DNA of 64,000 nucleotides from Zygnema circumcarinatum SAG 698-1b (GCA_037447605.1 CM074808.1:2480001-2544000); one strand, 5' to 3'. Shown: positions 34,722 to 60,051, numbered from the stretch's first letter. Numbers and translations are program-made. The notes: generated by a model not told the origin, from the sequence alone.

Positions 34722-37700
34722 TCAAAAAAACAAGATAATGTCTTCCACTTTTTTTACTTTCACTGGATCGCCTCTCTTCAGCTCCGCCCTCCGGACTGGC
34801 GGCAACTGCTTGTAAGATGCGAGAAACGCTTTCAATCGTTGACCCACAGTGCGCACATTGATCGGTTTTCCCATTACCGCTGAATAGCCCACAGTAGCGT
34901 ACCTTCTCTGTAGCACATGGGCGCAATTTTTCCATAGAAACTGTAAGTACATGGACGGACATCACAAGCAGCTGCTGAATGAGTAAAAAGACAAAAGATG
35001 AGTACCCAAGTTGACCAGAAAAGCAAACGGCTAAGTATCTCTGACACAGCTTCTCAGGCCAGTTGCCGGTGTAAGGCTTTGGATGATAGAGTATGGCGAC
35101 TTTATTTATAAGATTCATAGATAGCTTACCACGTCGTCAGGCTCAACATTAGCTGAAATGGCGATGATAGGCATTTCCGGTAATCCATTGGCAATCTCAA
35201 AATCTCGGACATGCATGCACGCCTCAGAGCCGTTCATCACCTTCAACCTGCCGCCAGCCGGCTCTGACCAAGTGTTAGCAACTCCGCCAAACCATTCTTT
35301 CTGTGTAGACCTCACATAGTATGCGAACAGAGCACCGCAAGGTCCGTTAGTTGTTTGTCAAGTAAAGTGTTAACAGAGATAAAGAGCTAAAGAGCTAACT
35401 GAGGGTTCACACAAGTAAGTTCCATCTCCCGTACGCAAAACGACCTGCTATTCGTCAACAAGCAGTACAACAGCACCGTCCAATTTGATTAAGACTCACT
35501 GAAACATTCTAACTTAGACTGAAAAGACAGGAGGGTTGATTGCCCGTTATTGCAGAGGGAAAAGACACTCACCGTTCATCAAGCAAGAGAGCATCGAATT
35601 GCTGTCGCTGATTCACCACCAACTCCACTACGTCGGTTCCATCTGAGCCGATTACTACATTGAAGCTCGCTCTGCGTACATTACAAGAAACCTATCAGTG
35701 TTGGCTCGAAATTAGATCCTTCAAGGCATTGACTGCCTATCCGTCAAACAGCTCCCAAGATCGCAAAGGTGGTCCTGTACTAAGGGTCATTCTCGCCTGT
35801 GTAAAACCTCCTTGAAATGCCTACTTCTACCCTCCTTTCCCTTCTGCAACACCGCAAAACACGCAGACTACTAACCCAACAAATGACGCGAAGGAGGTTA
35901 TTTTTTTTTTTTTTAAATGAAACACAAATGTAGCCAAACCTACCTACGGGCAAACGTCAAAAAAAAAAAACGCAAAAGACGACGTTGCCCTTATTCAAAC
36001 TCCTCTGACAACAAGGAAGAGGAAAAGCTCATTCATACCGGTCCAGTGCTCGCTTCACGACCCTTACGTTCACCGGCTCATCATCAATGATAAGTACCTG
36101 CAATAAAAATTGAGCTCCGAAGGCATTGGACATGGCGGTACGACCTGATTGACACTTGTAGACCCTCGATGAATTTAACATCAGAAAACACATGGGATTT
36201 CTGAACTTTTGACTCAATTGGATTGTAAACTTTGTCATTGGGTTTCAACTCAGAAAAGAGACGTACCTTAGGGGTGACCCACTCATCCGGCTGTGGCGTA
36301 GAAGTTTCTTGACCAGGCAAATGGGGTTGTACAGGTTGTGCTTCTACGACTGTTAGATGCAGCTCCTCCGGCTGAAGTGGACTTCCCATGCCTAGTCCAA
36401 GAACTTTTGCCGATGGTTGTACTTCTCTAGTTTCAAGTACATATTTTGTATCTTGGCGTGACGGTATTATCGTCGACTGAGGGGGGAAGGGGTGGGTCAC
36501 TGGAAGAGACTTGGTAGAAATGAGCCGTGTACCTGACGACGAAGTTGTACCTGACGACGAAGTAGCGGAACTACTAAAGGAAGCTCCCAATCGGCCTAGT
36601 GCCACAGTAGGCGCAGCAGCAGTGTTAAACACGGGCTGCAACTCTGAAGATTGGCAAGCGTAAGAATAGGCATCTGTGTTGCCAGGTTGACATGGTGGGG
36701 ACAGGTTTGGAGGCATGGGCGGGCTGGGACTGTTAAGAGTTTGAATGGCCTTCTTAGTATGTGAACGAAGTGCTCCAACCAGCTTTGTGGCTGCTTCTGA
36801 TGCTTGGTTGTCCCTGACATTTCTAGTCATTCTCGGAGAACCAAACATACTACTACATGTTGATGAAGTTGTGCTGAACGCGCCCGCCAACCCTGCAATG
36901 GAATTCGCTCTAGACAAAGGTACAGATGCATCTGCTGCCACGGTTAGAGCAGTGGGCGTTGCCACTCCTGACTCCCTGGGAACTCCTCCTGGTCGTAGGT
37001 CTCCAGAGCAGGCCACCTTAACGTTCAAACTGTTCTTCTGCTTGAACATAGCTGCCACCTCCTGCAAAGCCTTTGCCGTTGCAGCCGCAAGAAGCAGCAC
37101 TGGGGGTCGACCGTCACAGGGAACAGCCCCCCATTGCTGTCTCACAGTGCCTCTGGTAATAACCTCTGCAAGAACGGCAACTGCATCTGAGGCTACATGT
37201 TCCCGTACAACTTTGAAACTCCATTCGTCCCCATAGATACTATTCAAATTAGCAGTAGCTGCTGCCTGGTCTTCCACTGGGTCTCTATGTTGGTCAGCAC
37301 TTGTCTTGTACATCAAAGGCTGAGATTCTGAACCTGTTGTTTGAATCTCAGCATTCCCACCTCCCGAACATAAAGTCACTTCGGGTCCGCCAGTTGCACA
37401 GGTTGCAGTCAAACTCGGCAAAGCTCCTCTCTGCCCCCAAGATGGATGAGACGCACCATTGAGTTGACCTTGAGGAAATGCTTTTGGAAAATGGACAGGC
37501 GCAATCCTGCTGGCAAATGCCGGAAAATTTTCTTTTCCGTTACCCTTCGGAAATGATGTGGGTGGCATAGAGGGAGAGGGCTTCTGTGCCAACCGAGAAT
37601 CCATTTGGCTTGAAGAACGGAATGTCGTCGCCGAGATACTCGTTTGGTGTGCTTCGCCTGTATCTGAGCTCTGCCCATTGCGACCACCAGAATCTATGAC

Positions 37701-40700
37701 GATTCTCTTCACTGGCAACCGTGCCTCAGTTGGCCCAGACTGCTCCTTCACTGACGTACGAGGAGCTGCATCCTGCGAATGGACACCTGACCCCTTCAAT
37801 GGCTGCCTACCTGCACTAAGATTTATCTTCAGTGGAGGGTAAGCTAGGTTCTGTGTGGGGCGTAGAGAAGGAAGTGAGTCTCCGGTCACCAAGGACACTT
37901 CATTGGCTGCTTTGAGGGTTGATGCCTTTCCGGCTGTAGTGTCTGCTTGCTCTCCGGCAGAAGCAGACGAGCCCGCCCTTGCTCCTCGACTAACGGTTTG
38001 TATATCCTTAACGTCAACACTGTTTGCAGCAACAGGGGGAGCCTTCAGTCCACTGCTGCCTTGGGCTTTTGCTTCCGTCCGCGTATCTGCTGAAGAGAAA
38101 TTGCTATACCCAAGTGGTCCCTCCTTTCGAGTACCCTGTCTCAAGCTTGAAGGGTCCTGGACATCGTTGACCATTCCTTGCTCTCTGTCTACCTCTCCAT
38201 TTGCCAGATGGAGCTTCCTCACACCAGGAAAATCAAAGCCATCGCTTGAATCATATGAATCGGAATCAGAGCATGATCCGTCTCCATTACTAAGGCGAGA
38301 AGACTGCTTCCCTTCAGCAAAACTCGCGTCTTTGGTACCATGTGACACAATTTGAAGATCGACGTCTAGTGAAAAAGTGGAGCCCTTTCCCACTTCTGAC
38401 TGGCAACGGATGTCTCCTCCCATAAGGGAAGCGAGCTGTTGGCAGATCGACAGGCCTGCATACATAGAATTTATGTTAGTTAAGATATATGTTAATGGAC
38501 AGGACATGCAACTGGCAAGACTGAAGTACCGAAAAAAACGATACTGGCAGTCTAACCAACTTTCACGCATGTCATCGGCTCCCGCAGGAGTACAGGCATG
38601 AGGGTGGCCCACGCAAATAACAACAGATAAGGCGAAGCAAGCGGCCATAAAATGGGCGATTTGGGGTTTACCGTAGGGTTTCAACGGCTCACTCACCCAA
38701 ACCAGTCCCGCCATATTGGCTCGAGGAAGCCTTTTTGCCGGTCGAATATTGTTCAAACAAACGCACACGCAGGCTCTCAGGTATTCCTTCCCCAGAATCA
38801 GCCACCCGAAAATGAAAGCGTGCGAACTGTTTCCCATCCGGCAGAACTGGTTGTGGTTCTTCCATCCCAATGCTAATCTCCACCCAACCTTTCTGCGTGA
38901 ATTTCACTGCATTCCAAGCGAAGTTGGAGAGCACCTGTTGGAGTCGTGGAGCATCTCCCAAGGGCCTATAAGTCCGGCATCGTGCCTCCACAGTGCTATA
39001 GAGTTGCAAGCCTTTCTTTGACGCTGCAATGCCCACTTGGCTGATAACTGCATTCACAATTCTTTGCAGGTGCAGTTCAGCACATTCGAGAACTACCTTC
39101 CCTTCCTCTATGGAATTAATGTCCAGAACGTCTTCCACGATCTTGCGCAGCTGATGCCCACAGGTGGCAGTCGTCTCAACAAGCTCCTTCTGCTCATCTG
39201 ACAGAGTGGTGTCCTCCATGAAAGAGATATTACCCAAAATACCGTTAAGGGGGTTGCGAATCTCATGACAGAGGAAGGCCAAATGGCGCGTTTTAGCATC
39301 AGCAGCAGCTTCAGCCGCCAATCGAACCGCCATCGCCTTCTCCATGGCGCGATGCATCGTCACATCCTCCATAAAGCACATCACCTGCAAGGGATCAAGA
39401 CTCCCCATGGATGCTGCCTGTCAAGATTCATAACGAAGAGACAAGACTTCTGCAGGACAACACCATGAATCTAGCTCCTAGATATTTCAAGCTGGATGAG
39501 ATAAATCTGAACTTTCTTGAAGACTTCACCTGATCCGATTCTAATTATCGTGAGTAACTAAAACTTTGCTGCGTTGAGGTCAAGCTCGCCACACAGGTTC
39601 AATAACGGCGTTGAGAAAATCCTTACGAAGTACGGCCGAAGGATACGATTCAAGATGAATTATTAAAGTAAACCCACATGTTTTTTGGTGCCCAGTGGAA
39701 GCACAACAAGGCCATCATCACTTTGGGAAAAGCTTTCAAAGGAAGAGTGAGTAGGCAGTGAAGTATGCGTCACATATGCATCAGCAACTACAGAAGGTGA
39801 TGGGTATAGCCAGTAGTTAGTTCATGATATCTCGTGTCGAGTATAGTGGGAGGAATCAACCATCAGCTTACCTGGGATGTGCTTGAGAAATCGTCCTTAC
39901 GAAGCTGAATGTTCAGAACCGAATCGACACTTCTGCCTTCATCATTCACAAACTTGAACTGTATAAGCGGAGTCTCGTGGCCTGCGAGAGCTCGCTGGAT
40001 AGCAAACTCCAAAGAGAGGAGTGTATCTCTCTCGGGCACCATAAGCCTTTTTTCCAAACCCACTAGCTCTCCCACCAGGTTCTTTCCAATGGCCTGCTCT
40101 TTCGCAATACCGCTGGTCTGCAGCAACACAATAATAAGCAAGCCATGTCATGCCTTCCATATCCTCCGCAATATAAGGTCAAAATGTGGCAGGAATAACG
40201 TATAGCAAGCAGTCAACAGCATCATTTTTTCAAAGTCCTGCTGCACATCACTGGAAGGTCATGACAGCCTCTACACATTCGCATTTCAGTGGCGTAAAAA
40301 AGGTGACGAGTCTTTAAATTTGGACACATAGTGAGGCTAACATGCTACTCACCTTAGCCATGGCATTGTTCCATTCGACAATCTTCCCCTCCTTGTCCAC
40401 TCCCCAAATGGGCATGGTGGCCTGTCCAGACAAAAAGAAGAGACTTGACAGTCAGCAGCAAAGTTCACAAACGGATTTCAAAAACTTCCCGCAATTACCC
40501 ATTTAGCACAAGCAACGCGGCATCCTTGAACACTGTAGAATCGCATATAAAAACCTTGACACCAAAACATAGCAATGAGCTGCTCATCATCCAAACGGCG
40601 ATTAACATAACATCAAGACAAACAGTTTTAGAAAGTGTTTCAATTATGGATCTGAGGGTGGCATGGAAAGGCGCCATAATTTTCACCTTATCAAGCATCT

Positions 40701-43700
40701 GTTTGTAATCTCCGGCACTCTCCTCAAATCGCTTCATCATCCGCTTCTGCTCTGTAATATCTTGCCCAATGATGCTCACGCCAATAACTTCATTCGTTGA
40801 ATCCCATTGAGGAGTCATAGTGGCCATCAAAACCATGGTGCCCACATCGCCTTCCTCACCTTCAGATGCGCATTTTCCTGTCAATGCCACTTTCTCCTGA
40901 TTGGCTGCCATTTTGCTTGTGCACTTCAGCATAAGCTCCACATGGTCCTGGGCTTTGCCTTCCATAGTTTGTTCCAATTTGAGACGTGCAATTTCAAGGC
41001 TTTGCGGAACGAGTACCTCTCCCAAGCCTTTGCCAATAACAGATGCCTGCAAAGCAAATTGAATCCCTTAAAGGCTGCAATTTTGACATTAAGCGGATCT
41101 GCCTCGAGAAGCAATTACCTCAGGAACTTAGGGAAATAACATGTCGACATAAGGAGATTATGCCTGCTATAAATATCAAAAGCTCGCTAAATCCCAAGCA
41201 AAAAGCTTACTCTTCAATTATTGTACCATCAACTTTTACTCGTGGGCCAGATATGAAGTATTCAGACGTAACAAATAATAGAGTGCATAAAGGCCGACCT
41301 AGCCGACTGATTCCTAACAAAACTTTGCTTACCTTTGGCCTCCCTGTTAGCTCTGCGATGCGATTATTCCATTCGGTAATTAGCATGTCCTTGCTAATGC
41401 CCATAATTGGAGTCTTTGAAATCTCCATCATCCGTCCAAGATCACGAGCTACCATAGCCAGATCCTGCATGGCCCTTAGTCTCTCCTCATTGAGCCGAAC
41501 CTGAAGAAATGCAACATTGCAAACCCGCGATCAGGAGTGAAAACAAGTGGAGCCAAACAAAGGGTCTACACTCAGACCCGATCTCTGCCCAAAAGTGCCC
41601 AAAACAAGAAATCCGTCAGTGCAAGCTCCATTGACAACATGCACAGAGCTCACTGCATTGCATTCCTGTTTCATATCTCCTTTGGTCATTGACTCAAACG
41701 TATGAATTCGTTGTGCAACTTCCCCGCCCCCATGATATCATCAACCATCTGGGCATAGCTTCTTGCAGGTCTTGGGGTTTGAGTAACAATTCAAGACACG
41801 GTCTGAAATAGTACCAGCATCATTGTCTTCATCGGCTCACTGTTCCCATTAAGAGTCTCTTGGGCCAACCGTTGAAGGCCCTTCACTCCTGCCAACTGAA
41901 AACATCCGAGAGCGAGCATCGATTAGACAGCTTGGCAAACTCGTAGAAAGGTTTGTCGATTCACCTCGTTCTCCCTTTTGACATGTAGCAATAGGGCTGG
42001 TCTGGTATAGCTGTAGATTTTGCATTTGCTTGACGAACTGAAGTATGTTGGCCAAGTTAGATAATGCCAAATTTGATAGAGTGAGGATGCAATGTACCTC
42101 TCCCGGAGTCCAGGATACAGATCTGGCCACATGGATCAGCCGTTTCGGGTCATCCACTACAGAACTACCTCCCGCCGCAGCATCTATCCAGGCCCACTCG
42201 ACAGCAGCTTGAATGCCTGCAACAAGTACACCGTTAAAATCAGGCCCTGAAACCTTTTCGTCAAGAACATCAAAACACACAGTAGAGCTTCAGACAGTTG
42301 CAAGTGACCATGTAAATGCATTCCATAAAAATTGTCCATTGTAAACAGAATGATGTGCTGTGTTCCGGGCATACGTTTGCGGAACCAAAGGAGGACATCG
42401 GTCTGAGAGATGGAAGCCATCAGAACTCCGCAGATGCCGTCCGGCATATTATCAGCTCTGGGAAAGCCCTCCTCCGCCAAGCTCGCGGTGTGAAACACAT
42501 CTTCTGCCCACGCTTTCTCTCTCGCCCAGCTCACAAGCTCTTGTATCTGTACGGCCAATCCACACCTAATCAGGACATTAGGCAGGACTGTCCGTCCAAA
42601 AGAGAATTGGAGCTCAAGTGAAAGGAGTGTGTGCACCAACGTTGTGCAAATGTAGACATTAGCCACCCAGATCCAAGGAGCCATTATGAGGCTCAGGATT
42701 TTTTTGTATCCAGCAGATTTTGGCACTGTCCCTTCGCTGAACAACAAGAGCTGTCAAATCTGAACTCCAATCTGTCTGTTGTAAAAAGCTACTCAGCGTT
42801 CAGCCCTCTAAAGCTCATCAAAGGGTGATATGACAAATTTCTGCAAAAAATTACCTGTTTGTCAGAAAGGGAGACACCATCTCTCACAACATGGCCACCT
42901 CGGAGATGTGCCACACCATCGCAGGGAACCTGCAGACGTCAGATAAGGAATGTAAACCATGGTGTGATGCAAACCACTACTGTTAATCTAATTAAGTTCA
43001 CCCGCATTGTAAGCCTAGACCTGCCACGTGCACATATCCCTTCCAGAAGTCACAACACTTTAAGAGGATAATCTGTCATATGAACGAGTGCATGCGATTC
43101 ATCCACCAAGGACATGGAGGTGCTTCCTCTTTTTCCGGATAAAAAGACATATTCTGAGGTCTTGCACTGCACTTACGAGCTGTCGTATGGAAGGTTTCTC
43201 GCATACTAAAGAGGAAGGCACTTGATATGTGAGCCGGTCGCAGATCGCCGCCTGCAGACTTGAGATGCGACGGTTCTCTATTCTCTCCGCACCTTTCACT
43301 GATGTCATAAGGTGGGCTCTGAGGGCCTGGGAACCACAAGTACTATCATCAGTCAATAGCTGCCAAAATTGTACTTGCGGAAAAAGACGATAGACATCAA
43401 CAACATGGGAGTGGTGTATTCAACCTCCACCAAGTTTGAGTGAGACAGAGGCAGTGTATCAAAAACACAGATAAGGAACACCTCAGCTTCTCGAGCCCTT
43501 AGCTGTTTCCCAGCGCAACAAGTAGGTAGCATACATTCACTCCTATACAATGACATTCAGCCATGTAATTGCCTTGGCTTGGTCAATTCCTGAACAGAGA
43601 AGCAGGCCACATCAGCAGGTAAATGTGGTAAGACTCAACTCACCTGAACAGTGAACGTGCATGCAGCCCGTTGTGAGGATGGAATAGTCTTCGCCTCGTT

Positions 43701-46500
43701 GTAATTGTGCATGATTATTAAGCCCCAAACTTTCCGCTGTGCTCTACTCACTAAAGTTAATGGCATCAGTAGCAGAGAACGGACCCCAATGGCCAAAAGA
43801 GCTTCACGCTGCTTCGCATCAACACCTGCAAGGATCCAAGTTTACTAAACTTAGCCACCAAGTCAAAGATACCGGAGGCACACTCGCAAAGGCGAGAAAC
43901 ATTAAGATTCCCAGGCAATTTTACTTGAGGTGCTTGATAGACGGGAAAAGGGAGGACTAAGGAGGGATGTACGTTCGTGCCTTGAGATTGCCCAACAATG
44001 CCAAAAATTTGCACTTCCACAGAAAGTGTGAAGTGCTCTTAAAGAAACTTCTACACAGTAAGAAGTGAAATGGATTGAACTAAGTACTACGTCCCAGGAA
44101 AAAAAGCTGGAGACAGACCTGCTAAAGGTGAAGCTGTGAGAGCGATAGGCTGCACGACAGAAGCATCTTGAAGCAGGTCCGACTGTCCGGAGGAAGCATC
44201 GTAAATAAAGCGCATGGGAATCTGCTCTTTGCTGCCATCGTCGAGCCATTCCTGAAAGATAGCAATAACCACAATGAGCTCAACTAGGAACTAACCGTTT
44301 CTAATTCTTACAAAACTGAAGGAAATGAAGTCCTTTCACAATGCTGGAGCCCCAGACACAACAGATGTTTCGACCCATTATTTCATCCGTTTCAGGTGAT
44401 AGCTGCTTTTGGGTCAGAACATTAGCATGGTTAGCAAATGCCATGTAAACACCAAACACATCAAAGCACATCCACAAGCCAAATGAGACCTCACATTTCG
44501 CATGTGCTAGAAAGAAAGCTTGACATGGGTCTAGTAAAAACTCCAAAAAATAAATGAATGGGGTTACCTGCGGGATGTGCGGTTGGGGAAAAAATTTGCC
44601 AAATAGAGGTTCCAAATCATCGTCGACCGCTTCGGCAATAATCTGCAGAGCTCACTCAATCGGATTCAAATTTGGTCTGCGTTCCTGCGTCTATTCCTAC
44701 ATGAATTACGTCATAAATGCATAAATTGCAACTAAATGCTGGCTCTGAATTATAAAGAGACTAAGCCAGACACTACTAGCAGAAATTGGGATCACAGCAC
44801 GTAGCAAAATGTTTACTTTAGGGTTTGTGATAATCCATAAGCCCCACAATGGACGACTCACAATATTTGAATTGTAACTTGACGGCTTACCTGGGCATGG
44901 CTTTCATATGAGAGTTGGCCAATAATCACTCTATTATAACCTGTCAAGTTTCTCAGTTCCTGCGCCGGTTCCACATCCTCAAAGTTAAAGTGGAGCACTA
45001 TAACAGTGCAGAAGCTACAAATAGCCGCCTCCCAAAACAGTCCATATTATTGCCATACAGCGGCGTCTGTACCGTAAGCTCCATCTGCTACCTCAGACTC
45101 CTTAATGCATAATGATCGCAGACTCACGCACTGCTGAGCATAGAGAGAAAATTGTTCAACTGGAGCACCTGCACAGCAGCGTTGCATAGCCATGCAATGT
45201 CCCTGTTGGGTGCAGCTTGAAGTCGATCAATTGCCCTTCGAGCTAGCTGGTGAAAGTGTAGGCGAGTGACTGCCATGAAAATTGCAGCACCTCGTTTGTC
45301 AGTCTGTCACGTCCCTATTCAAACCCAGCTATCCGTCCACCTTTCGTCTCTATTCAAGCAAAGCAGACAATTGTGGAATGCTTATCCCGGTTTAAAAATC
45401 TTTCGCAATTAGTGAAAATCAGGAGAGAAACAAATGAGACAGCTTGGCGTAAGGGTCACAAAAATCCTTAAGCACCTTGCTCTAAATCGCGCTCCAAACT
45501 CACGATAATCCCAGGGCCGGTTTTACAGCCTGTCAAGCAAAGGTAGTGGCCTGCAATTGGAATTGATAGGTCCAACGTCAGAGTAGACGTAACAACGGCC
45601 ATAATAGTGCACAAACGGTCGGACATGCTGCAGCAAACCTTGCAGGCATCCAATTGTTGATCAGGCCAACAGGAACACTTCGCTAACAAGCTGCTTTCAA
45701 CTTACCCGTTTCCCTAAGTAATACACGGCAAGTGCTTGTCCCATGCTCAGATGCCCGTTGAAGTAGAGATACTATGACAGAAAACACCTGCCAAGAGCTT
45801 CAAATAACGTTCAGAGTGCTGATCAAACCATCGAATCCACTCCGCGAGAGCTTTAAGTACAACCATATATGGCAGGGTAAAGGTAAACCTTCACAGCGGC
45901 CAGGATAAGAAATTCTCAGGTGCTACATAGCGTGCAGCAAATAGTGCTAGCTGCTATTAGGAAGTACACAAGAGGCTCTCAGGTCAGCCGGTTTGACATG
46001 CTAGCATGGTTCTATCTTTGGTGGATTCCAATAAACCAGAAGAGAGCAATAAAACTTACTTCTTCAGTGAGCAGCTCCTGAAGCTTCAAGCCCAATGTCG
46101 CCCTCGGTCCTAAAGAAATTACGTGATCTTGGACCTCAATAAACTGCAAGAGATTTTCACTAATGGCCAGAACCTGCAGAACCATGCTCCTCCATTAGTC
46201 CAATGAAGCATTCATCTGAAGCCTATCCATATGAATTGATTCTACTCCAATTCAGTGAATACGTTCATTTCTTCAATTCATTTTCACCAAAGCTCCGCTG
46301 GCCAACCATTGCCAGCACCCGAATTGCAACGTGCCCAAAACAGCAACGCAGCCATAAAAATCACCAGCTCGGGCTCACCCTGGGCGAGCTCTCACCTCGT
46401 GCGTCTTCTCGTCCACTACCAGCACGGCCCCGTGGCTTTGGCACAACACACCCGGCCGAAACGCAGTAACGGAGCGCATGTCTGCCCCGCTGGCAACCAT
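34722..46500 (-). CDS. Phytochrome-like hybrid histidine kinase (PAS-GAF-PHY-PAS-PAS-HisKA-HATPase-long linker-REC) lacking bilin-binding residues
   Basis: More than 20 in-frame exons, e.g. 46500-46396, 46173-46060, 45787-45706, 45550-45476, 44959-44891, 44642-44568, 44251-44119, 43825-43644, 39384-38697, 38455-36267, 36097-36039, 35671-35573, 35247-35130, 34907-34722. Kinase motifs [32 protein letters not shown] motifs IIDDE, LLLDE, ISA, GKP. Confidence 0.92.
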
Positions 46501-46536
46501 CCTTCTGCCGTCAGCGCTCCTCCCTCCGGCCGCGCG

Positions 46537-46599
46537 TCAAGCTCCGCCCGCCTCCCCGCGCGCGCAAGGAGGGCGGGAAGAAGTGGAGGAAGGTGCCAT
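46537..46599 (-). other. 20-codon upstream ORF (MAPSSTSSRPPCARGEAGGA*) in frame with the phytochrome-like ATG
   Basis: ATG at 46599 and TGA at 46539-46537; 99 nt upstream of, and in frame with, the ATG at 46500. Confidence 0.6.
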
Positions 46600-47221
46600 G
46601 GCCTGCCAAGAGAAAGCACGTCCGCAGGGGGCAGCCGTATCTGTGTCCCGCGTTCGTACATATTCGTACACTCCTCCGGGGAGGCACAAACAAACTTGAT
46701 CGAGCGGCCCGGCCATTGAATCCCTCTGTACGGTCCGTATGGTGGCGTACTTTTCTCGTTTCTTTTTGGCGCGGCGACACGTGTCGCGCGGACGATCACA
46801 ATCCAGACTCGTTGGCGCCGTACGGCGCAGTAGAGGACGGATCGGTCAAGTAAAATCTTGGTCCTGCGACTAGATGGACTAGTCATGACTAGTCCGGCGC
46901 ATGACCATTGGCTAGTCGGACCACCATCGCAAGAGGCATGTGTGCATAGGCTCGTGTTGAACACGAGATGGCTGTTGGGTTTGAGAGAGGCGAGGATTGC
47001 ATGTAAGTCGTCGAGCCGATTTGAAACGTTTCTGCAAGCCCTGGATCTTGTCGTAGTGGACTGACTGGAAAGCGCGGCGAATCCATGGATATCCATTTGC
47101 ACGATTGTAGTTTGCAGTTTGCGCCTACAGTACTGGTTTGGGAGTGGAGGTTGCTGTTGGTCTCCTATTGCGAAATCGAGGGCAATCATCACGTGAAGCA
47201 CTCGTGAAGATGATGACGATG

Positions 47222-47316
47222 TGGCATTGATCTCACGATGGCGAGGCCGTCAAATGTACATGCACAAAAACAGCATGTGGAACCACGAGGGACTGGTCGC
47301 CATAGGACCTAGGCAC
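47222..47316 (+). repeat. Dispersed ~85-bp repeat, copy 3
   Basis: tggcattgatctcacgatggcgaggccgtcaaatgtaca...accacgagggactggtcgc...ggacctag. Confidence 0.8.
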
Positions 47317-47339
47317 AAATGAAAAAGGGTAGTGCTAAA

Positions 47340-49224: not shown

Positions 49225-49286
49225 GCCGTCAAATGTATACGGACAAAAGCAACATGTGGAGCAACCGGTCAAGGCGATCTAGGAAC
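49225..49286 (+). repeat. Dispersed repeat, partial and diverged copy 4
   Basis: gccgtcaaatgtatacggacaaaagcaacatgtgga...gatctagg. Confidence 0.55.
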
Positions 49287-49914
49287 TGAAAGGAAAGCTA
49301 CGTGCCCAGGAACGCAGCAGGCAGCTGCCGCGAAGGTCGCCCATGTCATCCGGGGGGGCACGTGACGCCGCGCGGCGGGAGGGAGGGAGGGAGGGAGGGA
49401 GGGAGGGCGAGGCCGCGCGTGCATCGATCGCCAAGGGCGGCGGCCACGGCGCGCTCGCGGACGGACGGACGGACGGCAAGCGCGCGCGCTTGTTCGCATG
49501 CAGACGGGCGGCGGCTCGGCTCGGCTCGACTCGCGGCCCGCAGCCGCAACATGGGGCCGCGCGCGGGAGCCGACAGACTCGGCGGCCGAGCGGCAAAAGC
49601 ACAGAACCGTACCGTCGTGGGCGCAGAAATCACGCACAAAAGTAGTTGCTCCCCCCCATCTACCGCGGCGCTGGGTCTGGCTGGCATTACGGGAGGCCGT
49701 CTCTCAGACTTTTAAAAAAAAATCGGCAGTTGTACTGAAGAAAATTGTTGATCAACTGTGGTACTATATGAGTACTTTGCAAATATATTGGTTCAGCTTC
49801 AGAAGAGTACTCGTTTCAAAAAAACTTTACTTCTACTGAAGAAAATGAGTCCGTTCGGTTTTTGCGAGTGCCGCCATAAGAGCCACGCCCGCCCGTCGCG
49901 GAGCTGTCGTCATC

Positions 49915-50275: not shown

Positions 50276-53200
50276 ATGGCCGTGCGCCTCTCCAAGGCCA
50301 AGAAGAACTTCCGCGTCGTGCAGGCGGCGGCGGATGCGCACCTCGAGTTCAACTTCGAGCAGCGCGCCAGAGAGGGCGCCCCCGGGAAATGGGATTATTT
50401 GAACTCTGTGGTGGAGCAGACGCGCCTGGCACACAAGGGGGTGGGTCGTTTCGCCTTGCTCTGTGCTCTGCCTCTGAAAGGAAGAGGGTGACTGCTGCCT
50501 ATCTCCTGCATGATCAGCGTGACAATTTTCAGTCCTCTCAAGATCGCAAGCAGAGGTTCCAAGACTTAGGTTCGGACGTGGATGAGCGCACGGCTGATTG
50601 AGGATATTGGTCGGGAACCTTTCAAAACGTAGAGGCTGCACAGCTTGCAAGGCGATGTTTTTCCATGTCCTTCAGGTCAACGTAGCGCAAGCAAGCAATT
50701 CTTGCATTGGTGTGCGTTTTTGCAGGACCTGGCTGCTGGGAAAGGAACAGGGCAGGATGAGAATGGTGTGGACGTCCACGCGTATCTGCACCATGTGCAG
50801 CGGCCTGGATTCATCCAACCCTTTGGGACTTTAGTCCTTGTGAACGAGAAGACATTGCAGGCAAGCGCTGCCCTGTGTTTTCCAAATTTAAACAAGATAG
50901 GCTGCATTCCTTACAGAGGCTTCAGATAACGCAAACATTCCTTTTAGGGCCTCGGTTTTGGAAGACCTACTGCGAGATAACTTTCTCAAGTAGCACACTA
51001 TACCTGTTGAAAAAGGGGACGAGCAACTTTAAAACTGCTCATGCGATAGTTCTGAACAGTTTCTTGCAGCTTCATTTCATTAAGAAACTAGGATTAGCGC
51101 CTCTAAAGGCCTCATGGAAGGGCTCGGCTGTGTTTACAGGTGCGGGCAGTTGCTGAGAATGCCTGGGACTACTTGGATAAGGAGGCTGATGAAGAGACAG
51201 CACATGAAATTTTAGGCAGAGATATCCGTCAAATGTTTACTCCGGAGGTAACATCACTTCCGAACCTCCTACTTTCGGCGGTCTTTTCGTGTGAATCCGT
51301 GAAGTAGAAGCTTCAAACGAAGTCCAGATTGCACTGAAGTTCACTTGCTGACACGTTTCTCCCTCGGCGAGACAGAGCATGGAGGACATGGAACAGAGTC
51401 TACAATGCTCAGATTTGAGTCTTGCGAACCCAGTAGCTGTTTATACCGCAAAAACAGGTAAGTGCGGGCGCAACTGAGCGCAAACTACGTCATTCAGCCT
51501 TTTGAAACTGTTTCCGAATGTTCAGTCGGTCAATTGTTGCGGACAAAGTGCAGTGTCTCAGTTAAATACTTCTGGCAATCTGTGTTGTCATACAGGGCGA
51601 GCTTTGTATGCAATCCTCCATAGAATTGACGAAGGAATAGTAATCGACTTGGAACCTCAGTGGGATGACGGTGAGTGATTTGTCCACACCAACAACCCTG
51701 TTAAAACATTTATTGGCTTGTTCCGACGCATCCGCAACTTCTCATTTGTTACTTTATGGGTCTTTTATTTCAAGAGTAATCTTGACAGCGTTGTTCGGCT
51801 GCAGAGGCTCGAGGAGCTGAAACGAAAGTCTTGGATAAGCACGATCGAGCATCGGCAAGCATTGCAAAGCTGCAGGGCTGCAATGACATGACTGACCTCT
51901 GCGATACTCTCGTGCAAGTGCGCATATTCGTCATGCCCTTGCCTAGATAGTTCAGATGTTTCGGTTCTTTTGCGGACGTCAGAGAGTGCTGCCTTACAGA
52001 AGGCTCATTCCGATGGCATAGTTCGGTGAAAGTTGTATCACTACAATTGCTTCTGTACGGAGGCAAAGTAGATGATGTTAAACAGGTTGAAGTCAGCATT
52101 GGACTTACCTTGTCTTGGAGTTATTTGGGATATGTTGTTGTTTCCAGGAAGTGAAGGCATTGACTGGCTATGATCGCATTATGCTCTACAGGTTCCATGA
52201 GGATCAACATGGAGAGGTCAGTTGGCCTTCAATCGCTAAATATTCGCGATGTGGGCTTGGGTGCGCTAAAACCCAATCATCCGCATTTTTCGTCCCGTAG
52301 CTGCCTACTCCAGACCTATTTTGCGAACTCGTTGGGATGGAGCCAGTTACAGATAGAATGCTCCATCGCCTTCCGGGTGCAAGCCTCTGGAATGGAGCTA
52401 TGGCAGACTGCATTGAAGCTGTTGGGATCGCGTCTTCCGCGGAGTCTAGAGTAGTGGAATCTTAGACGGAGATGAAGCTCAAGATGCATATGTTTGGTGA
52501 AGTCGAGATTCAAACGTATTTGCAGCATCATCCGTGAATTGCACTTGGATCTCAGACTGCTAATTGAGAGGAATGATTCGGAGAGGCTGCAGCTAATCGA
52601 CTTACTAAAGCATGCTGCAGAAGCTTGATTGGTTCAATCAGTTGGTGATTGTCATATACTGCAAGAAACTGCGAACCACTTCGCTTCCTTAGGTGTTTTC
52701 GCTGTCGTTTGTCGTCCTCGTTCAGGTTATTGCAGAAGCAAAAGAAGACTCTTTAGCTCCTCTTCTCGGTCTTCACTTTCCAGCAAACGATGTCCCTCAG
52801 GTACGTTCTTCCTGTATGCAGCTTGTGAGCTATAAGTCCTGGCTGGTGGGGCAGCCGTAGAGAAGGGCTTGATCATGGCATGACTAACTGTCCAATCTCC
52901 ATATGGAATGGTGCCGCAGGCAAACAGACAGTTGTTTGTGGATGTGCGGCTGAGGATGATTGCCGACACCCACGCTGGCAATGTTAACATCATCCAGGAT
53001 CCCCTTCTTGAGAATCCTATTCCTCTTTCAAAATCGACATTGCGAGGTCAGTCTTCACTTGTGCTGGTTTCAAGTCTGCTTGTGGATGATCCTCCCTCCC
53101 TCCCTCTTTCCCTCCCTCTTTCCCTCCCTCCCTCCACCCTCCCTCCCTCCCCTCCCTCCCTCCCTCCTCCCTCCCTCCCTCCTCCCTCCCTCCCTCCCTC

Positions 53201-56200
53201 CCTCCTCCCTCCTCCCTCCCTCCTCCACCCTCCTCCCTCCCTCCCTCCCTCCCTCCTCCCTCCCTCCCTCCCTCCTCCCTCCCTCCCTCCTCCCTCCCTC
53301 CCTCCCTCCCTCCTCCCTCCCTCCCTCCCTCCCTCCCTCCCTCCCTCCCTCCTCCCTCCCTCCCACCCTCCCTCCCTCCCTCCCTCCCTCCCTCCCTCCT
53401 CCTCCCTCCTCCTCCTCCCTCCCTCCTCCCTCCCAACCTCCCTCCCTCCCTCCCTCCCTCCCTCCCTCCCTCCCTCCCTCCCTCCCTCCCTCCCTCCCTC
53501 CTTCCCTCCCTCCCCTCCCTCCCTCCCTCCCTCCCTCCTCCCTCCCTCCTCCCTCCCTCCCTCCCTCCTCCCTCCCTCCCTCCCTCCCTCCCTCCCTCCC
53601 TCCCTCCCTCCTCCTCCCTCCTCCCTCCCTCCCTCCCTCCCTCCCTCCCTCCCTCCCTCCCTCCCTCCCTCCCTCCCTCCCTCCCTCCCTCCCTCCCTCC
53701 CTCTCCCTCCCTCCCTCCCTCCCTCCCTCCCTCCCTCCTCCCTCCCTCCCTCCCTCTCCTCCCTCCTCCCTCCCTCCCTCCCTCCCTCCCTCCCTCCCTC
53801 CCTCCCTCCCTCCCTCCCTCCCTCCTTCCCTCCCTCCCTCCTCCCTCCCTCCCTCCCTCCCTCCCTCCCTCCCTCCCTCCCTCCCTCCCTCCCTCCCTCC
53901 CTCTCCCTCCCTCCCCTCCCTTCCCTCCCTCCCTCCCTCCCTCCCTCCCTCCCTCCCCTCCCTCCCTCCCTCCCTCCCTCCCTCCCTCCCCTCCCTCCCT
54001 CCCTCCCCTCCCTCCCTCCCTCCCTCCCTCCCTCCCTCCCTCCCTCCCTCCTTCCCTCCCTCCCCTCCCTCCCTCCCTCCCTCCCTCCCTCCCCTCCCTC
54101 CCCTCCCTCCCCTCCCTCCCCTCCCTCCCCTCCCTCCCTCCCTCCCTCCCTCCCCTCCCTCCCCTCCCTCCCTCCCTCCCTCCCTCCCTCCCTCCCTCCC
54201 TCCCCTCCCTCCCCTCCCTCCCCTCCCTCCCTCCCTCCCTCCCTCCCTCCCTCCCCTCCCTCCCTCCCTCCCTCCCTCCCTTTCAAAGATTTTGAGTCGC
54301 CCAAATGAGTTGCCGCGTACAGGCGTGGCGGGTTGCCACAAGGAGTACAGTAAGAACCTTGGTTGCCAGGGCACCCTGGTTATGGCCGTCGTGGTGACGG
54401 TGGACCCCCAGCGCGCCCGCCATCTGTGGGGGCTCGTGTGCTGCCACCACCACTCCGGCCCGCGGGTCATCTCCTACCCGCAGCGCTGCGCCTGCGACTT
54501 CCTCATCCAAGCCTTCGCCCTGCAGCTGGCCATGGAGATGGAGGCAGCAGAGGAGGCTCGGGAGAAGCGGGTGCTGCACATGCAAGCGGTGCTCTGCGGG
54601 ATGCTGACCCGCGATGCTCCTCTTGGGCTGATCCGCCAGAGCCCAAACATACAGGACCTGGTAGCTGCCTCGCTTCCGCCTGCTTTCTTATCGTCCCATT
54701 TCCTGCAGGTGCAGGCTGTTGAACGAAGACTTTCTGGCAAAATTAACGAAAACCGGGTGTTGTGATGCGGTAATCGCAGGTTCCCGCTGACGGGGCCGTT
54801 CTGCTGCATGCTGGAAGAGCTTGGACTTTGGGATGTGCACCGTCTGAGGAGCAGGTTAGCCGACTCCCCCCTATCTGTTGACTTTTGGCTAGCTGCCATG
54901 GAAGAGGCGGACTGTGGGGAGGTTCAGTTTGGACTGAGTGGGAGGAGATGGGCTGTGGGCCGTGGGGCTCAGATTCCTGCCTTGGCTCAATGGCTGGTGG
55001 AGACGGAAGGGGAGCTTCTTTCTCAAGGCGTGTTTGTCGTGAATAGTTTGGAAGCGGCAGGCTATCCCGGGGCCGCTGCGCTTGCTCCGGGAGTGTGCGG
55101 GCTGGCGGCAGCCATGGTTTCGAATGGCGGTGATTTGCTCATGTGGTTTCGTTCGGGTAGGTTTCGATCATTCTCGAGGGACAAATTGGGGTCCTAGTTT
55201 TGTTTGTTTTAAGGTCTTTTCATTGTGACCGTACCATTTCTCAATCTTGGGGATGGACTCGTGTGTGCAGGAATGTCCAAAATGATCAAGTGGGCTGGGC
55301 ATAGGGCCACACACACAGTGAAAGAGGGGGCCAACATGCATCCTCGCATGTCGTTTGATGCATATTTGGAGGTGGCGAAGCTGCAGAGCCTCCCTTGGGA
55401 GGATGCTGAAGTGAGAACTGTTTGCACGCGTCAAACACCCACTTCCTTTCCTGCCTTTTGACGCTCTTTTGCATGGAACTCTCGCCCCTTTCTAGTGTGT
55501 TTTGCAGAATTTTCACCACAGGAAGTGGACTTATCAGAGCTCGGTGTGGCCGGGCTTGCAGGTGGATGCCATGCAGGGCTTGAAACTCATAGTTCGCGAT
55601 TCTCTCCCGGAGAAGGGTCCGCAAGAACTTCGGCTTAAAATTCAGGTTCAAAACTGCTTCCTCCTTAATCTATGAACTATTCGGATTTTTACTGTTGCTG
55701 CACAGTCTGTCTGCCTTCTTGCTTATCCAACATTGTTGCGTCGTTGGGACAGACGCGGCTGAATGCGGAACGTCTCCGCATTCAGAATCAGGTGACGCAA
55801 GTTGCCCGCAGCCTCCAAGTAGAGCTTGAGTCTGCCCGTGTACCCATCATCGGCCTTTGGGGCTCTGGAGTGGTGTCGGAATGGAATGGAAAAGTGGCAG
55901 AGCTCACCAAGCGGTCCAAGGTATGCCATGTCCAACTTGTCAACTTGAAGCTCTCTCATTCAACCTTCAACAAATAGGCAGTCGGTCAAACTTGAAATCA
56001 TGTCCATCCCAATGTTCTACACGCTTTGACTCAGTCTGCACCATACTTGTGTCAGAACGAAGTGATGGGGCTGAGCTTCCCTATGGACCTGCTAGTAGAC
56101 GAGTCGAGAGCGGCGTTTGCGAAAGCCATGGAGGTGGTGGCGGGGGGAGAGGAGGTAGAGCCCATAGAGCTCTGCCTTAGCGCTCGGCACCGCCCAGACG

Positions 56201-59200: not shown

Positions 59201-60051
59201 TCCAATACATTCTTATTGAATAAGGATGTAGTTCTATCTTACATAACGATCACAACTCAGCTAACGGTAATTCCTGGGCGAGCCCCCTTTACAAGAACTG
59301 TGGTCTTCTTGTAAATTCCACATCTGACAACGGGCTGTTTTGATCTCCCTCCTGCAGAGATGCCCTTGGAGGTGCAGGACTCGGATTAGTGGTGTGCCGG
59401 AAGCTGGCCTCCCTCATGGGGGGCACCGTCCATTGCACAACCCATGAAGGCAGCGGCTCCTCCTTCTTCCTCGATCTCGAACTGCTGCGAGTGGCTGAAC
59501 CCGAGGATGTGGACGAAGACTTCGAGCACGGGCAGCAGTGGAACAACAGACTGAGAGGGGTTATCTACACCACTGTGGGAGAGTGGAGCAGCGCTGAGGA
59601 GGTAGCTTCTGCAGAGCACGTGAGCCCCACAATGTCGCCCGTTGACGTGCAGGGGGGGGCGAGGACGGAGCAGCCGCCCACTCCCTCTGGAGAGGCAGCC
59701 GCTGAGAGTGCATCAGATGGGATGTGGTTTCCCGCGAGCGGTCTCATGTCAAGTGAGGGCTACGCAGCGGGGGGGCACTTGGAGCAGGCCTTTGGAGGGA
59801 AGTTCTCAGTGCAGGTGCTGAGAGAGATTATCGACTGGCAAGAGGTCGCAGTTCTTGTAGAGGTGGAGGTGATGGACGCTCAGACTGGTGAGAGGAGTAT
59901 GTCAATACAGGAGTGGGGATCGGCGCATCGCGTGGGGTCATTAGGGGAGGAGCTCCGAGCAGCCACTCGAAATGCTGTCATCACCGCAGCAAATTCATTA
60001 TCGGCTATTGAACGTGAAGTTCTGTCGTCTACTTTTCGTTCAACGGGATGA
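50276..60051 (+). CDS. PHY: Phytochrome with intact photosensory core and His-retaining kinase (NTE-PAS-GAF-PHY-PAS-PAS-HisKA-HATPase-novel C-terminus, no REC); PHYX-like by inference
   Basis: Exons 50276-50440, 50726-50860, 51140-51247, 51376-51457, 51596-51670, 51805-51917, 52148-52216, 52726-52800, 52920-53046, 54323-54660, 54780-54854, 54973-55156, 55271-55410, 55562-55645, 55753-55920, 56056-56310, 56446-56664, ~56922-57052, 57717-57867, 58033-58136, 58360-58480, 58735-59048, 59358-60051. Motifs [60 protein letters not shown]. Confidence 0.96.
53091..54281. repeat. ~1.2 kb imperfect (CCCT)n polypyrimidine array inside PHY intron 53047-54322
   Basis: Directly visible; almost exclusively C and T. 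Confidence 0.98.

What the first reader, a model, noticed from the sequence alone, without database searches (positions are those of the whole stretch)
42090..44959. A 'blind' phytochrome: systematic loss of bilin-pocket residues in an otherwise intact gene
Seen: the exons of the - copy align position-for-position with those of the + copy. In Cph1 numbering (established phytochrome biochemistry), Tyr176 becomes Gly (MLYRF vs IIGQL) and the DIP Asp207 becomes His (PANDVP vs PQPHIP). Arg254 becomes Ala (TLRG vs PLAG), Cys259-His260 becomes Lys-Gln (GVAGCHKEY vs GVDAKQREA; codons 43814-43809), and Tyr263 becomes Ala. WAG becomes WAW and the PRxSF tongue motif is absent. Only the His290 equivalent survives. 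The reading frame, splice sites, kinase and REC are all intact. Inference: a maintained chromophore-less phytochrome that senses another ligand or acts as a signalling partner. I am not aware of a characterised streptophyte protein of this kind.
Basis: partly seen in the sequence, partly recalled or inferred. Interest (0 to 1): 0.93.

Follow-up and report, generated by a model that had tools for sequence, protein, structure and literature searches.

The report
Cysteine-less PHYX1 phytochrome of a streptophyte alga
The minus-strand gene is an expressed, conserved phytochrome relative that has lost the residues needed to hold its light-absorbing pigment, but it belongs to the PHYX1 family, which was already reported in 2015 as lacking the pigment-binding cysteines.

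Summary
The minus-strand gene (window 46617-34722, 24 exons, 1904 aa) has the order PAS-GAF-PHY, PAS-PAS, histidine kinase, long linker, REC. Spliced contigs from four public runs confirm 15 GT..AG introns across the sensory part. At pocket positions that are near-invariant in 18 chromophore-type phytochromes it has other residues: Y176G, D207H, R254A, C259K, H260Q, Y263A, S272L, T274L, WAG to WAW, and no PRxSF. The plus-strand neighbour keeps them all.

It is neither a one-off nor a pseudogene. Eight other proteins share the losses (Mesotaenium, Spirogloea, Closterium and three unnamed database entries). They form a 100/100 clade with the window's protein. The GAF domain is 43-64% identical among them, against 17-30% in the linker. 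Non-synonymous change (pN 0.34) is far below saturated synonymous change (pS 0.90).

Li et al. 2015 (PMC4525182) named this clade charophyte PHYX1. They noted the conserved kinase histidine, the occasional REC, the absence of all known bilin-binding cysteines, and that it "may not bind a bilin".

What this work adds is the pocket-wide and tongue-wide loss, the family-specific conserved replacements, and proof of spliced expression. The function is untested. The earlier notes of this scan are on this same window, not on other DNA.

The parts
34722..46617 (-). Whole PHYX1-type gene: 24 exons, ATG at 46500, stop at 34724-34722, 1904 aa. Domain order: PAS-GAF-PHY, PAS-PAS, HisKA-HATPase, roughly 700-aa linker, REC.
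   Evidence: Spliced contigs; assembly and translation; homology-guided 3' junctions.
46396..46617 (-). Exon 1: 5' UTR of at least 117 nt plus aa 1-35. An in-frame stop lies upstream of the ATG. CQSHG stands in place of IQPFG.
46060..46173 (-). Exon 2, aa 36-73 (PAS).
45706..45787 (-). Exon 3, aa 74-100 (PAS). It contains Cys93 (45730-45728), which is conserved in the eight family members aligned at this column and is not a Cys in the chromophore-type sequences shown.
45476..45550 (-). Exon 4, aa 101-126 (end of PAS).
45169..45269 (-). Exon 5, aa 126-159 (start of GAF, HQLARRAIDRLQ).
44891..44959 (-). Exon 6, aa 160-182. Gly173 (44920-44918) stands at the Tyr176 position.
44568..44642 (-). Exon 7, aa 183-207. 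His204 (44579-44577) stands at the Asp207 position; F200, I205 and P206 are kept.
44119..44251 (-). Exon 8, aa 208-252. Arg221 (the R222 equivalent) is kept. Ala251 (44122-44120) stands at the Arg254 position.
43644..43825 (-). Exon 9, aa 252-312. Lys256-Gln257 (43814-43809) stand at Cys259-His260, Ala260 at Tyr263, Leu269 and Leu271 at S272 and T274. His291 (the H290 equivalent) is kept.
   Evidence: Pfam GAF E 0.001, below the curated cut-off
43177..43326 (-). Exon 10, aa 313-362 (GAF-PHY connecting helix).
42855..42929 (-). Exon 11, aa 363-387 (start of PHY, PCDGVAH).
42375..42546 (-). Exon 12, aa 388-445 (PHY core, ends LLWFRK).
   Evidence: Pfam PHY E 2.2e-10
42098..42216 (-). Exon 13, aa 445-484 (tongue). 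EWAW has Trp454 (42190-42188) at the Gly of W(G/A)G. There is no PRxSF. The SWTPGE Trp is kept.
41815..41895 (-). Exon 14, aa 485-511 (end of PHY).
41333..41500 (-). Exon 15, aa 512-567 (linker helix and start of PAS).
40687..41046 (-). Exon 16, aa 568-687 (PAS). The 5' junction is seen in reads; the 3' junction is homology-guided.
40353..40421 (-). Exon 17, aa 688-710 (PAS).
39872..40117 (-). Exon 18, aa 711-792 (PAS).
   Evidence: The part of run X1's contig beyond 41332 (676 nt) nearly equals exons 16-18 (675 nt).
38697..39384 (-). Exon 19, aa 793-1022: HisKA with H-box His832 (39267-39265), and HATPase N, G1 and F boxes.
   Evidence: Pfam HisKA 3.9e-18, HATPase_c 1.3e-12
36267..38455 (-). 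Exon 20, aa 1022-1751: G2 box and end of HATPase, then a low-complexity linker in a single 2.2-kb open exon. A conserved module of about 80 aa lies at aa 1421-1500 (about 37283-37038).
36039..36097 (-). Exon 21, aa 1752-1771 (start of REC, acidic pair in LIIDDEP).
35573..35671 (-). Exon 22, aa 1771-1804 (REC; phospho-acceptor Asp1802, 35580-35578).
35130..35247 (-). Exon 23, aa 1804-1843 (REC).
34722..34907 (-). Exon 24, aa 1844-1904 plus the stop (REC Lys1857 and a conserved C-terminal tail).
50294..60048 (+). Comparator: the head-to-head chromophore-type paralogue (PHYX2-like). It keeps Y176, D207, R254, C259-H260, Y263, WAG and PRxSF, and has the H-box His. No REC was found in the window. 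Its exon model was not completed.

Best explanation
The gene is this alga's orthologue of charophyte PHYX1. PHYX1 is a phytochrome-derived hybrid histidine kinase whose PAS-GAF-PHY module no longer has what a phytochrome needs to attach and photoconvert a bilin.

Shown: it is transcribed and correctly spliced, and it encodes an uninterrupted 1904-aa protein. Its fold family is that of a phytochrome photosensory module. The attachment Cys and a set of otherwise near-invariant pocket and tongue residues are replaced. The same replacements are shared by a well-supported clade from several zygnematophyte lineages. The module evolves under purifying selection. The kinase (H-box His832; N, G1, F and G2 boxes) and the REC (DD pair, Asp1802, Ser, Lys1857) keep their catalytic signatures.

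Inferred: the protein binds no bilin in the canonical way and is not itself a red/far-red switch. The old pocket has been repacked (small residues at 176 and 254, Gln at 260, Leu at 272 and 274). The tongue has been rebuilt around a conserved W-A-W motif. The sensory module therefore acts as a fixed or differently regulated dimeric input to a normal His-to-Asp phosphorelay.

My odds within that picture: it receives its cue from a partner, most plausibly the chromophore-bearing, REC-less PHYX2 paralogue next door, about 35%. It senses a non-bilin ligand or redox state, about 35%. It is a constitutive scaffold or kinase, about 10%.
For: Spliced contigs in 4 runs from 3 studies show 15 GT..AG junctions and give an open frame. 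The full model has 1904 aa and no internal stop. Pfam on exons gives HisKA, HATPase_c and PHY above cut-off and GAF just below it. Orthologue P0151 has PAS_2, GAF, PHY, PAS, HisKA, HATPase_c and Response_reg, all above cut-off. The family profile hits phyB and phyA at E about 1e-70 over the whole module. The AF2 model of the nearest orthologue has pLDDT 80.5, and its best structural matches are phyB modules (TM 0.72-0.85). Site table: Y176, D207, R254, H260, Y263, the tongue Gly and P-R-S-F are invariant in the comparators and are replaced across the clade. D207 survives in one of the nine members, P0002, whose gene model looks faulty in this region. The new residues are conserved: G/A, A/S, Q (8 of 9), L, L, W (9 of 9). 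The clade has 100/100 support and the nearest member is 58% identical. GAF identity is 43-64% against 17-30% in the linker. Against Logan contig L001 the sensory module has pN 0.34 and pS 0.90. Li et al. 2015 describe PHYX1 with the same architecture and the same lack of cysteines.
Against: No biochemistry exists, so non-covalent bilin binding or attachment at an unconventional Cys cannot be excluded from sequence. Cys93 in the PAS domain is conserved across the family and is one such candidate. R222, F203, I208-P209 and the H290 equivalent are retained, so part of the pocket frame persists. The names of Li et al.'s sequences are not visible in the tools. The identification of P0151, P0001 and P0004 as their PHYX1 entries therefore rests on shared features and a common UniParc accession batch. 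The eight 3' junctions rest on homology and contig lengths, not on laid reads. The codon test used a distant relative with saturated synonymous sites and pre-filtered columns, so it gives only an upper bound on dN/dS. The partner idea has weak support: the PHYX1-PHYX2 adjacency seen here is absent in Spirogloea and in Closterium NIES-53.
Confidence: 0.78

Rival explanations
1. It is still a photoreceptor. It would bind a bilin or another chromophore non-covalently or through a non-canonical cysteine (for example the family-conserved PAS Cys93) in a remodelled pocket, with unusual spectral properties.
For: [quoted passage not shown] R222, F203, I208-P209 and the H290 equivalent are kept. Several replacement residues in the pocket are themselves conserved, as expected if the cavity still matters. 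A clade-specific conserved Cys exists in the PAS domain.
Against: Bacterial phytochromes that attach the bilin at a different Cys still keep Y176, D207, R254, H260, Y263 and PRxSF (bacterial rows). Here all of these are replaced together, along with the propionate-binding S272 and T274 positions and the tongue Gly. The tongue is predicted with low confidence and without a hairpin. By established phytochrome structures, the PAS Cys sits in a strand that is not adjacent to the bilin; this point rests on my knowledge and was not measured here.
Confidence: 0.14
2. It is a decaying duplicate (pseudogene, or a relaxed and functionless sensory domain) of the neighbouring phytochrome.
For: It lies next to a canonical paralogue. 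Many catalytic-type residues are lost. The branch leading to the clade is long (1.02 changes per site). Its sensory module evolves about 1.7-2.4 times faster than that of the PHYX2-like clade over comparable species pairs.
Against: It has 24 exons with intact GT..AG sites, 1904 codons without a stop, and spliced transcripts in 4 runs. The losses are shared by orthologues in Mesotaenium, Spirogloea and Closterium, so they are ancient rather than recent decay. The GAF domain is far more conserved than the linker. pN/pS is at most 0.38. The paralogues are not recent copies; each groups with its own clade.
Confidence: 0.03
3. The apparent losses are an alignment or gene-model artefact.
For: The exons are short (23-60 aa), and single-exon searches are weak (E about 0.1 for the GAF exon alone).
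Against: The junctions are seen directly in spliced contigs. The flanking motifs (LTGY-RV, FP..IPQ, S-L-G, WGL, WFR, W-TxxE) anchor every lost position. MAFFT and HMMER give the same columns.
Confidence: 0.01

Closest known systems
Charophyte PHYX1 (Li et al. 2015, Nat Commun 6:7852, PMC4525182)
   Same: Non-canonical streptophyte-algal phytochrome with PAS-GAF-PHY, PAS-PAS and a histidine kinase that keeps the phospho-acceptor His, with a C-terminal REC in some members. It lacks all known bilin-binding cysteines and was reported from Zygnematales and Coleochaetales. The window's protein has all of these features and groups 100/100 with the Cys-less proteins.
   Different: Nothing separates it from the family, so it is a member. 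What is added here goes beyond the published remark about cysteines. Most of the 14 otherwise near-invariant columns that are lost are pocket or tongue positions. Family-specific replacements are conserved (G/A176, A/S254, Q260, L272, L274, W-A-W). Spliced expression is confirmed. A member exists in Closterium (Desmidiales).
Charophyte PHYX2 and prasinophyte phytochromes (the plus-strand neighbour; Tetraselmis and Nephroselmis phytochromes AIS82727.1 and AIS82726.1)
   Same: Same overall architecture up to the histidine kinase with a conserved His. Prasinophyte members also carry a REC. A weakly similar module follows the HATPase in both window genes.
   Different: These keep Cys259-His260 and every pocket and tongue residue, and the prasinophyte proteins are bilin photoreceptors. 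The PHYX2-like neighbour has no REC in the window.
Chromophore-less ('achromo') bacteriophytochrome RpBphP4 of some Rhodopseudomonas palustris strains (Vuillet et al. [quoted passage not shown]
   Same: A phytochrome histidine kinase that lost bilin binding yet stayed functional, responding to another cue (redox, through cysteines). This is the best precedent for a blind phytochrome kept by selection.
   Different: It is bacterial, arose independently, varies at strain level, and has a different domain set (no PAS-PAS, no fused REC). No redox sensitivity has been shown for PHYX1.
Apo-bacteriophytochromes RpBphP2 and RpBphP3 acting without light sensing (Fixen et al. 2014 PNAS, as summarised in PMC6879726)
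   Same: They show that phytochrome proteins can signal in a pathway where their light-sensing ability is dispensable but the protein is required.
   Different: Those proteins can still bind biliverdin. PHYX1 lacks the residues to do so.
phyB Y276H (YHB), the light-insensitive, constitutively active plant phytochrome
   Same: A change at the Tyr176/Tyr276 position uncouples signalling from light. PHYX1 has Gly or Ala there. The best structural matches of the PHYX1 model were Pfr and YHB phyB chains, which is only a weak hint.
   Different: YHB still carries its bilin and is a laboratory allele. PHYX1 has lost many more residues.

Membership tests
Phytochrome superfamily (photosensory PAS-GAF-PHY module) | PAS_2, GAF and PHY domains in that order, with the phytochrome fold | tested here: met
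   The PHY exon scores 2.2e-10 and the GAF exon 0.001 (below cut-off). Orthologue P0151 has PAS_2, GAF and PHY all above cut-off. The family profile hits phyB, phyA and Cph1 at E 1e-73 to 1e-35. The AF2 model matches phyB at TM 0.72-0.85.
Phytochrome superfamily (bilin photoreceptor in the functional sense) | A bilin-ligating cysteine (the GAF Cys259 type, or the N-terminal type of bacteriophytochromes) | tested here: not met
   Lys256 stands at the Cys259 position, and the clade has K/R/Q/L/Y/A there. The only N-terminal Cys (Cys20) replaces the Ile of IQPFG and is not conserved in the clade.
Phytochrome superfamily (bilin photoreceptor in the functional sense) | Conserved pocket residues Y176, D207 (DIP), R254, H260 and Y263 | tested here: not met
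   The window's protein has G, H, A, Q and A at these positions. All are invariant in 18 comparators, and R254, H260 and Y263 are replaced in all 9 clade members, Y176 likewise, D207 in 8 of 9.
Phytochrome superfamily (bilin photoreceptor in the functional sense) | Tongue motifs W(G/A)G and PRxSF | tested here: not met
   W-A-W replaces W-A-G in 8 of 9 members (W-I-W in the ninth), and no PRxSF is present. The tongue has pLDDT below 50 in the model.
Charophyte PHYX1 (Li et al. 2015) | Lacks the known conserved bilin-binding cysteines (CysA-D) | tested here: met
   The canonical GAF Cys is absent, there is no Cys next to the D207 position (HIPQ), and there is no conserved N-terminal Cys. The exact CysB position of Rockwell et al. 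was not looked up.
Charophyte PHYX1 (Li et al. 2015) | Histidine kinase with the conserved phospho-acceptor His; REC present in some members | tested here: met
   H-box FLCHEIRNPLNG has His832. HisKA and HATPase_c are found by Pfam. The REC has a DD pair, Asp1802 and Lys1857.
Charophyte PHYX1 (Li et al. 2015) | Falls in the PHYX1 clade, separate from PHYX2, prasinophyte and canonical phytochromes | tested here: inconclusive
   It sits in a 100/100 clade with eight Cys-less proteins from Mesotaenium, Spirogloea, Closterium and three UniParc entries of one accession batch. The tools show no source names that tie those entries to Li et al.'s KT072038-44. No canonical land-plant phytochrome was in the tree.
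Charophyte PHYX1 (Li et al. 2015) | Occurs in Zygnematales or Coleochaetales | not testable with these tools
   The window's organism is not disclosed. All named nearest relatives are Zygnematophyceae.
Hybrid two-component histidine kinase | H, N, G1, F and G2 boxes plus a receiver domain with the acidic pocket, phospho-Asp, Ser/Thr and Lys | tested here: met
   The sequence motifs are present in the translated model. The kinase domain is 72-87% identical to its orthologues and the REC 60-76% identical in the five orthologues that cover it. Activity was not tested.

The most novel reading that the evidence does not exclude
PHYX1 may be a repurposed phytochrome. Its repacked GAF pocket and rebuilt W-A-W tongue would either bind a non-bilin signal (a small ligand, or redox through the family-conserved PAS cysteine). 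Or they would lock the module so that PHYX1 works as the REC-bearing, light-blind partner of the REC-less, bilin-binding PHYX2. That would be a two-protein photoreceptor and relay unit peculiar to the algae closest to land plants. No such role has been demonstrated for a eukaryotic phytochrome homologue in the papers I could search.
Probability: 0.3. Interest if true: 0.7.

Novelty: new member of a known kind. Interest (0 to 1): 0.36.

Why it matters
PHYX1 was named in 2015 and, as far as the searchable literature shows, has not been studied since. It is one of the few eukaryotic cases where a photoreceptor scaffold has apparently been kept for hundreds of millions of years after losing its chromophore site. 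This report gives a transcript-supported gene model and a residue-level map of what was lost. It also maps what was newly fixed: G/A176, A/S254, Q260, L272, L274 and the W-A-W tongue. It shows that the module is under selection. Together these make the open question, what a blind phytochrome senses, directly testable by expression, spectroscopy, phosphotransfer and partner assays. The gene is not a new kind of protein, and a specialist who knows Li et al. 2015 would not be surprised that it exists.

Tried and rejected
- A single-exon search of the GAF exon against solved structures gave only weak hits (E about 0.1). I replaced it with a family profile.
- Two word-based homologue searches returned only 6 and 10 significant proteins, and a third with a domain fragment returned none. 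So no close-species coding sequence could be obtained for a proper dN/dS.
- Nei-Gojobori dS against the only available nucleotide relative (L001) was saturated (dS undefined). I report raw pN and pS instead.
- I tested whether the head-to-head PHYX1-PHYX2 arrangement is conserved. It is not in Spirogloea (different scaffolds). In Closterium NIES-53 no phytochrome lies within 10 kb upstream.
- The Vuillet 2007 paper is not held, so that precedent is cited from a reference list and from memory.
- I did not complete the plus-copy exon model. For the tree I used 12 clean exon fragments.
- The AF2 model returns no coordinates, so pocket volume and the position of Cys93 or Trp454 could not be measured.
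- Pseudogene and alignment-artefact readings were rejected, as set out under the rival explanations.

Full report
**What is at the locus.** Two phytochrome-like genes lie head to head. A six-frame self-comparison showed that the minus-strand pieces between about 36 and 45 kb match plus-strand pieces between about 52 and 59.5 kb at 30-45% identity. The minus gene is the subject of the finding.

**Transcript and gene model.** Seven public runs hold 30-42% of the sampled words of 41800-45100, as expected if they hold exons only. I laid the contigs of four runs (three studies) on 41000-46900. This gave 15 joints, each skipping 155-317 bases, each CT..AC on the plus strand, that is GT..AG on the minus strand, and each seen in all four runs. 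Weak contigs inside introns are consistent with some unspliced RNA. Joining the exons gives one open frame that starts at an ATG at 46500, preceded by an in-frame stop.

The rest of the gene was modelled from orthologues by choosing GT..AG pairs that maximise similarity. The full model has 24 exons (46617 to 34722) and 1904 codons with no internal stop. As weak support for the 3' exons, the parts of two contigs that run beyond the laid stretch have lengths that match the summed model exons. For X1 this is 676 nt against 675 for exons 16-18. For X2 it is 3961 nt against 3959 for exons 14-22.

**Domains.** Pfam on single exons finds HisKA (3.9e-18), HATPase_c (1.3e-12), PHY (2.2e-10) and GAF (0.001, just below the curated cut-off). 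The nearest full-length orthologue, P0151, has PAS_2, GAF, PHY, PAS, HisKA, HATPase_c and Response_reg, all above cut-off.

The translated model keeps:
- the H-box histidine (His832);
- the N, G1, F and G2 boxes;
- the receiver's acidic pair, Asp1802, and Lys1857.

**The observation.** A profile of six family members aligns over the whole sensory module to plant phyB and phyA at E about 1e-70 and to Cph1 (2VEA) at 3.6e-35. That alignment puts the family's Gly under phyB Tyr276 (seen as His in the YHB entry 9irk), Ala under Arg352, Lys-Gln under Cys357-His358, and a hydrophobic residue under Tyr361. The Cph1/phyB equivalences (Y176/Y276, D207/D307, R222/R322, R254/R352, C259/C357, H260/H358, Y263/Y361, H290/H403) are established knowledge, not computed here.

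In a 27-sequence alignment the window's protein reads as follows:

| Cph1 position | Residue in the window's protein |
|---|---|
| Y176 | G |
| D207 | H |
| R254 | A |
| C259 | K |
| H260 | Q |
| Y263 | A |
| S272 | L |
| T274 | L |
| tongue Gly of W(G/A)G | W |
| PRxSF | absent |

It keeps F203, I208, P209, R222, the H290 equivalent and both tongue tryptophans. So 'only His290 survives' is overstated.

A census makes the pattern quantitative. Thirty-four columns are near-invariant in 18 chromophore-type phytochromes: the plus copy, the PHYX2-like proteins, the prasinophyte proteins, other eukaryotic proteins and bacterial proteins. The Cys-less clade keeps 16 of these, is mixed at 4 and has lost 14. 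The 14 are M174, Y176, the Gly of HGEV, D207, the Arg after DIPQ, R254, H260, Y263, N266, the tongue Gly and P-R-S-F. Most of them are recognised chromophore or tongue positions.

**It is a family trait.** A full HMMER scan with the kinase exon returned five long proteins at 73-81% identity. Their kinase domains lie at about residue 800-1070, which is phytochrome-like. Further searches added three more.

Named sources are Mesotaenium endlicherianum (ME000212S03050), Spirogloea muscicola (three copies) and Closterium sp. NIES-53 (CAI7753963.1). Three others are UniParc entries of one accession batch. All share the losses. A Logan contig from another run carries a further member with the same changes.

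In a maximum-likelihood tree the window's protein sits inside a 100/100 clade of these nine proteins, nearest to P0151 (58% identity). The plus-strand gene sits in a separate 100/99 clade with chromophore-type proteins.

Several replacements are themselves conserved across the clade:
- Gly or Ala at 176;
- Ala or Ser at 254;
- Gln at 260 (8 of 9);
- Leu at 272 and 274;
- Trp at the tongue Gly (9 of 9).

D207, C259 and the PRxSF positions vary.

**Selection.** Identity of the window's protein to its orthologues, by region:

| Region | Identity |
|---|---|
| GAF | 43-64% |
| PHY | 33-56% |
| Kinase | 72-87% |
| REC (five orthologues that cover it) | 60-76% |
| Linker | 16-30% |

Codon comparison with the Logan contig gives pN 0.34 and pS 0.90 for 296 sensory-module codons. 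Synonymous sites are saturated, so the ratio of 0.38 is an upper bound. The columns were filtered for alignability, which favours conserved sites.

The clade's stem branch is long (1.02 changes per site). Its sensory module evolves roughly twice as fast as that of the PHYX2-like clade. This fits a burst of change followed by constraint.

**Structure.** AlphaFold2 on the nearest orthologue's module (24-row alignment) gives pLDDT 80.5 and pTM 0.73. The tongue (475-490) is below 50 and has no hairpin or helix. Foldseek's best matches are Arabidopsis phyB modules at TM 0.72-0.85. The top ones are Pfr or Y276H chains, which I treat as a weak hint only.

**What is known.** Li et al. 2015 (PMC4525182) defined charophyte PHYX1 and PHYX2 in Zygnematales and Coleochaetales. 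They state that both keep the kinase histidine and that some PHYX1 have a REC. [quoted passage not shown] Their supplement lists PHYX1 from Zygnemopsis, Mesotaenium kramstae, three Cylindrocystis, Netrium and Coleochaete. Wang et al. 2019 only repeat that PHYX1 and PHYX2 were retained in some streptophyte algae. Searches for PHYX1, non-canonical phytochromes, chromophore-less phytochromes and Zygnema phytochromes found no functional study.

So the kind is known and this gene is a member. What the held literature does not state is the pocket-wide and tongue-wide loss with conserved replacements.

The closest functional precedent is bacterial. One case is the chromophore-less RpBphP4 of some Rhodopseudomonas palustris strains, which became a redox sensor (Vuillet et al. 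2007; reference seen, paper not held). The other is the apo-bacteriophytochromes, whose light sensing is dispensable for low-light signalling.

**Mechanism.** Shown: an expressed, selected protein with a phytochrome-fold module that lacks the canonical bilin site, joined to an apparently competent kinase and receiver.

Inferred: it binds no bilin in the canonical way and does not photoconvert. The pocket is repacked and the tongue rebuilt. The output is an ordinary His-to-Asp relay.

The input is unknown. A partnership with the REC-less, bilin-binding PHYX2 is attractive for four reasons. The parts are complementary. Li et al.'s species lists for the two clades largely coincide. The two genes are adjacent here. 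A weakly similar module follows the HATPase in both. However, the adjacency is absent in Spirogloea and Closterium. A non-bilin ligand or redox input is equally possible, given the conserved new pocket residues and a clade-conserved PAS cysteine.

**Verdict.** Interest is moderate.

Noticed in passing
window 53091-54281 (+ strand gene, intron between the STLRG exon and the VAGCH exon): About 300 tandem copies of CCTC (90% matches) fill an intron of the plus-strand phytochrome. They create long spurious open frames (SLPP and GGRE repeats) on both strands. Similar GGREGGRE-type frames occur in the intergenic stretch at about 48.3-49.7 kb.
   Followed up: partly
window 37038-37283 (- gene, aa about 1421-1500) and 59755-60003 (+ gene): A conserved module of about 80 aa sits inside the otherwise unconserved linker. 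It is 44-59% identical among the PHYX1 orthologues that cover it. It is weakly similar to a module after the HATPase of the plus-strand gene and of PHYX2-like P0107 (blastp E 0.05; motifs FxVxVxRE, AVAVL, WG). It has no Pfam match.
   Followed up: partly
window 45728-45730 (Cys93 of the - gene): This PAS-domain cysteine is conserved in the eight family members aligned at this column. In the chromophore-type sequences shown the column is Pro, Leu or a gap. It is a candidate redox or attachment site and is untested.
   Followed up: no
window 46617-50294: The two phytochrome genes are divergently transcribed, with about 3.7 kb between the minus gene's 5' end and the first coding match of the plus gene. 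The arrangement is not seen in Spirogloea (different scaffolds) or in Closterium NIES-53 (no phytochrome within 10 kb upstream).
   Followed up: partly
window 62400-64000 (+ strand): Exons of a 6-phosphogluconate dehydrogenase-like gene (NAD-binding GxAxMGxN motif, then KGTGKWT) run off the right end of the window. This was recognised by eye only.
   Followed up: no
P0160 (Spirogloea muscicola SM000048S16582, 2466 aa): This gene model contains two complete PAS-GAF-PHY modules (residues 2-505 and 1169-1724), both PHYX2-like. It is probably two tandem genes fused by annotation. The second module is the nearest relative of the window's plus copy (64% identity).
   Followed up: partly
L001 (Logan contig SRR30199805_69225, 7173 nt), about 3150-6900: This is a further PHYX1 gene from another organism with the same changes (Ala at 176, Ser-Gln at 259-260, Val at 263). 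The contig appears unspliced or genomic, with short introns.
   Followed up: partly
window 42547-42854 and 44252-44567 (introns of the - gene): Low-depth contigs (depth 3-13, against 24-69 for the spliced contigs) lie inside introns in several runs. This suggests some unspliced pre-mRNA or intron retention.
   Followed up: no
model m146d17e45664 (P0151 residues 1-560): The best structural matches of the PHYX1 sensory-module model are Pfr-state and Y276H phyB chains rather than Pr-state chains. This may only reflect which parts are resolved in those entries.
   Followed up: no
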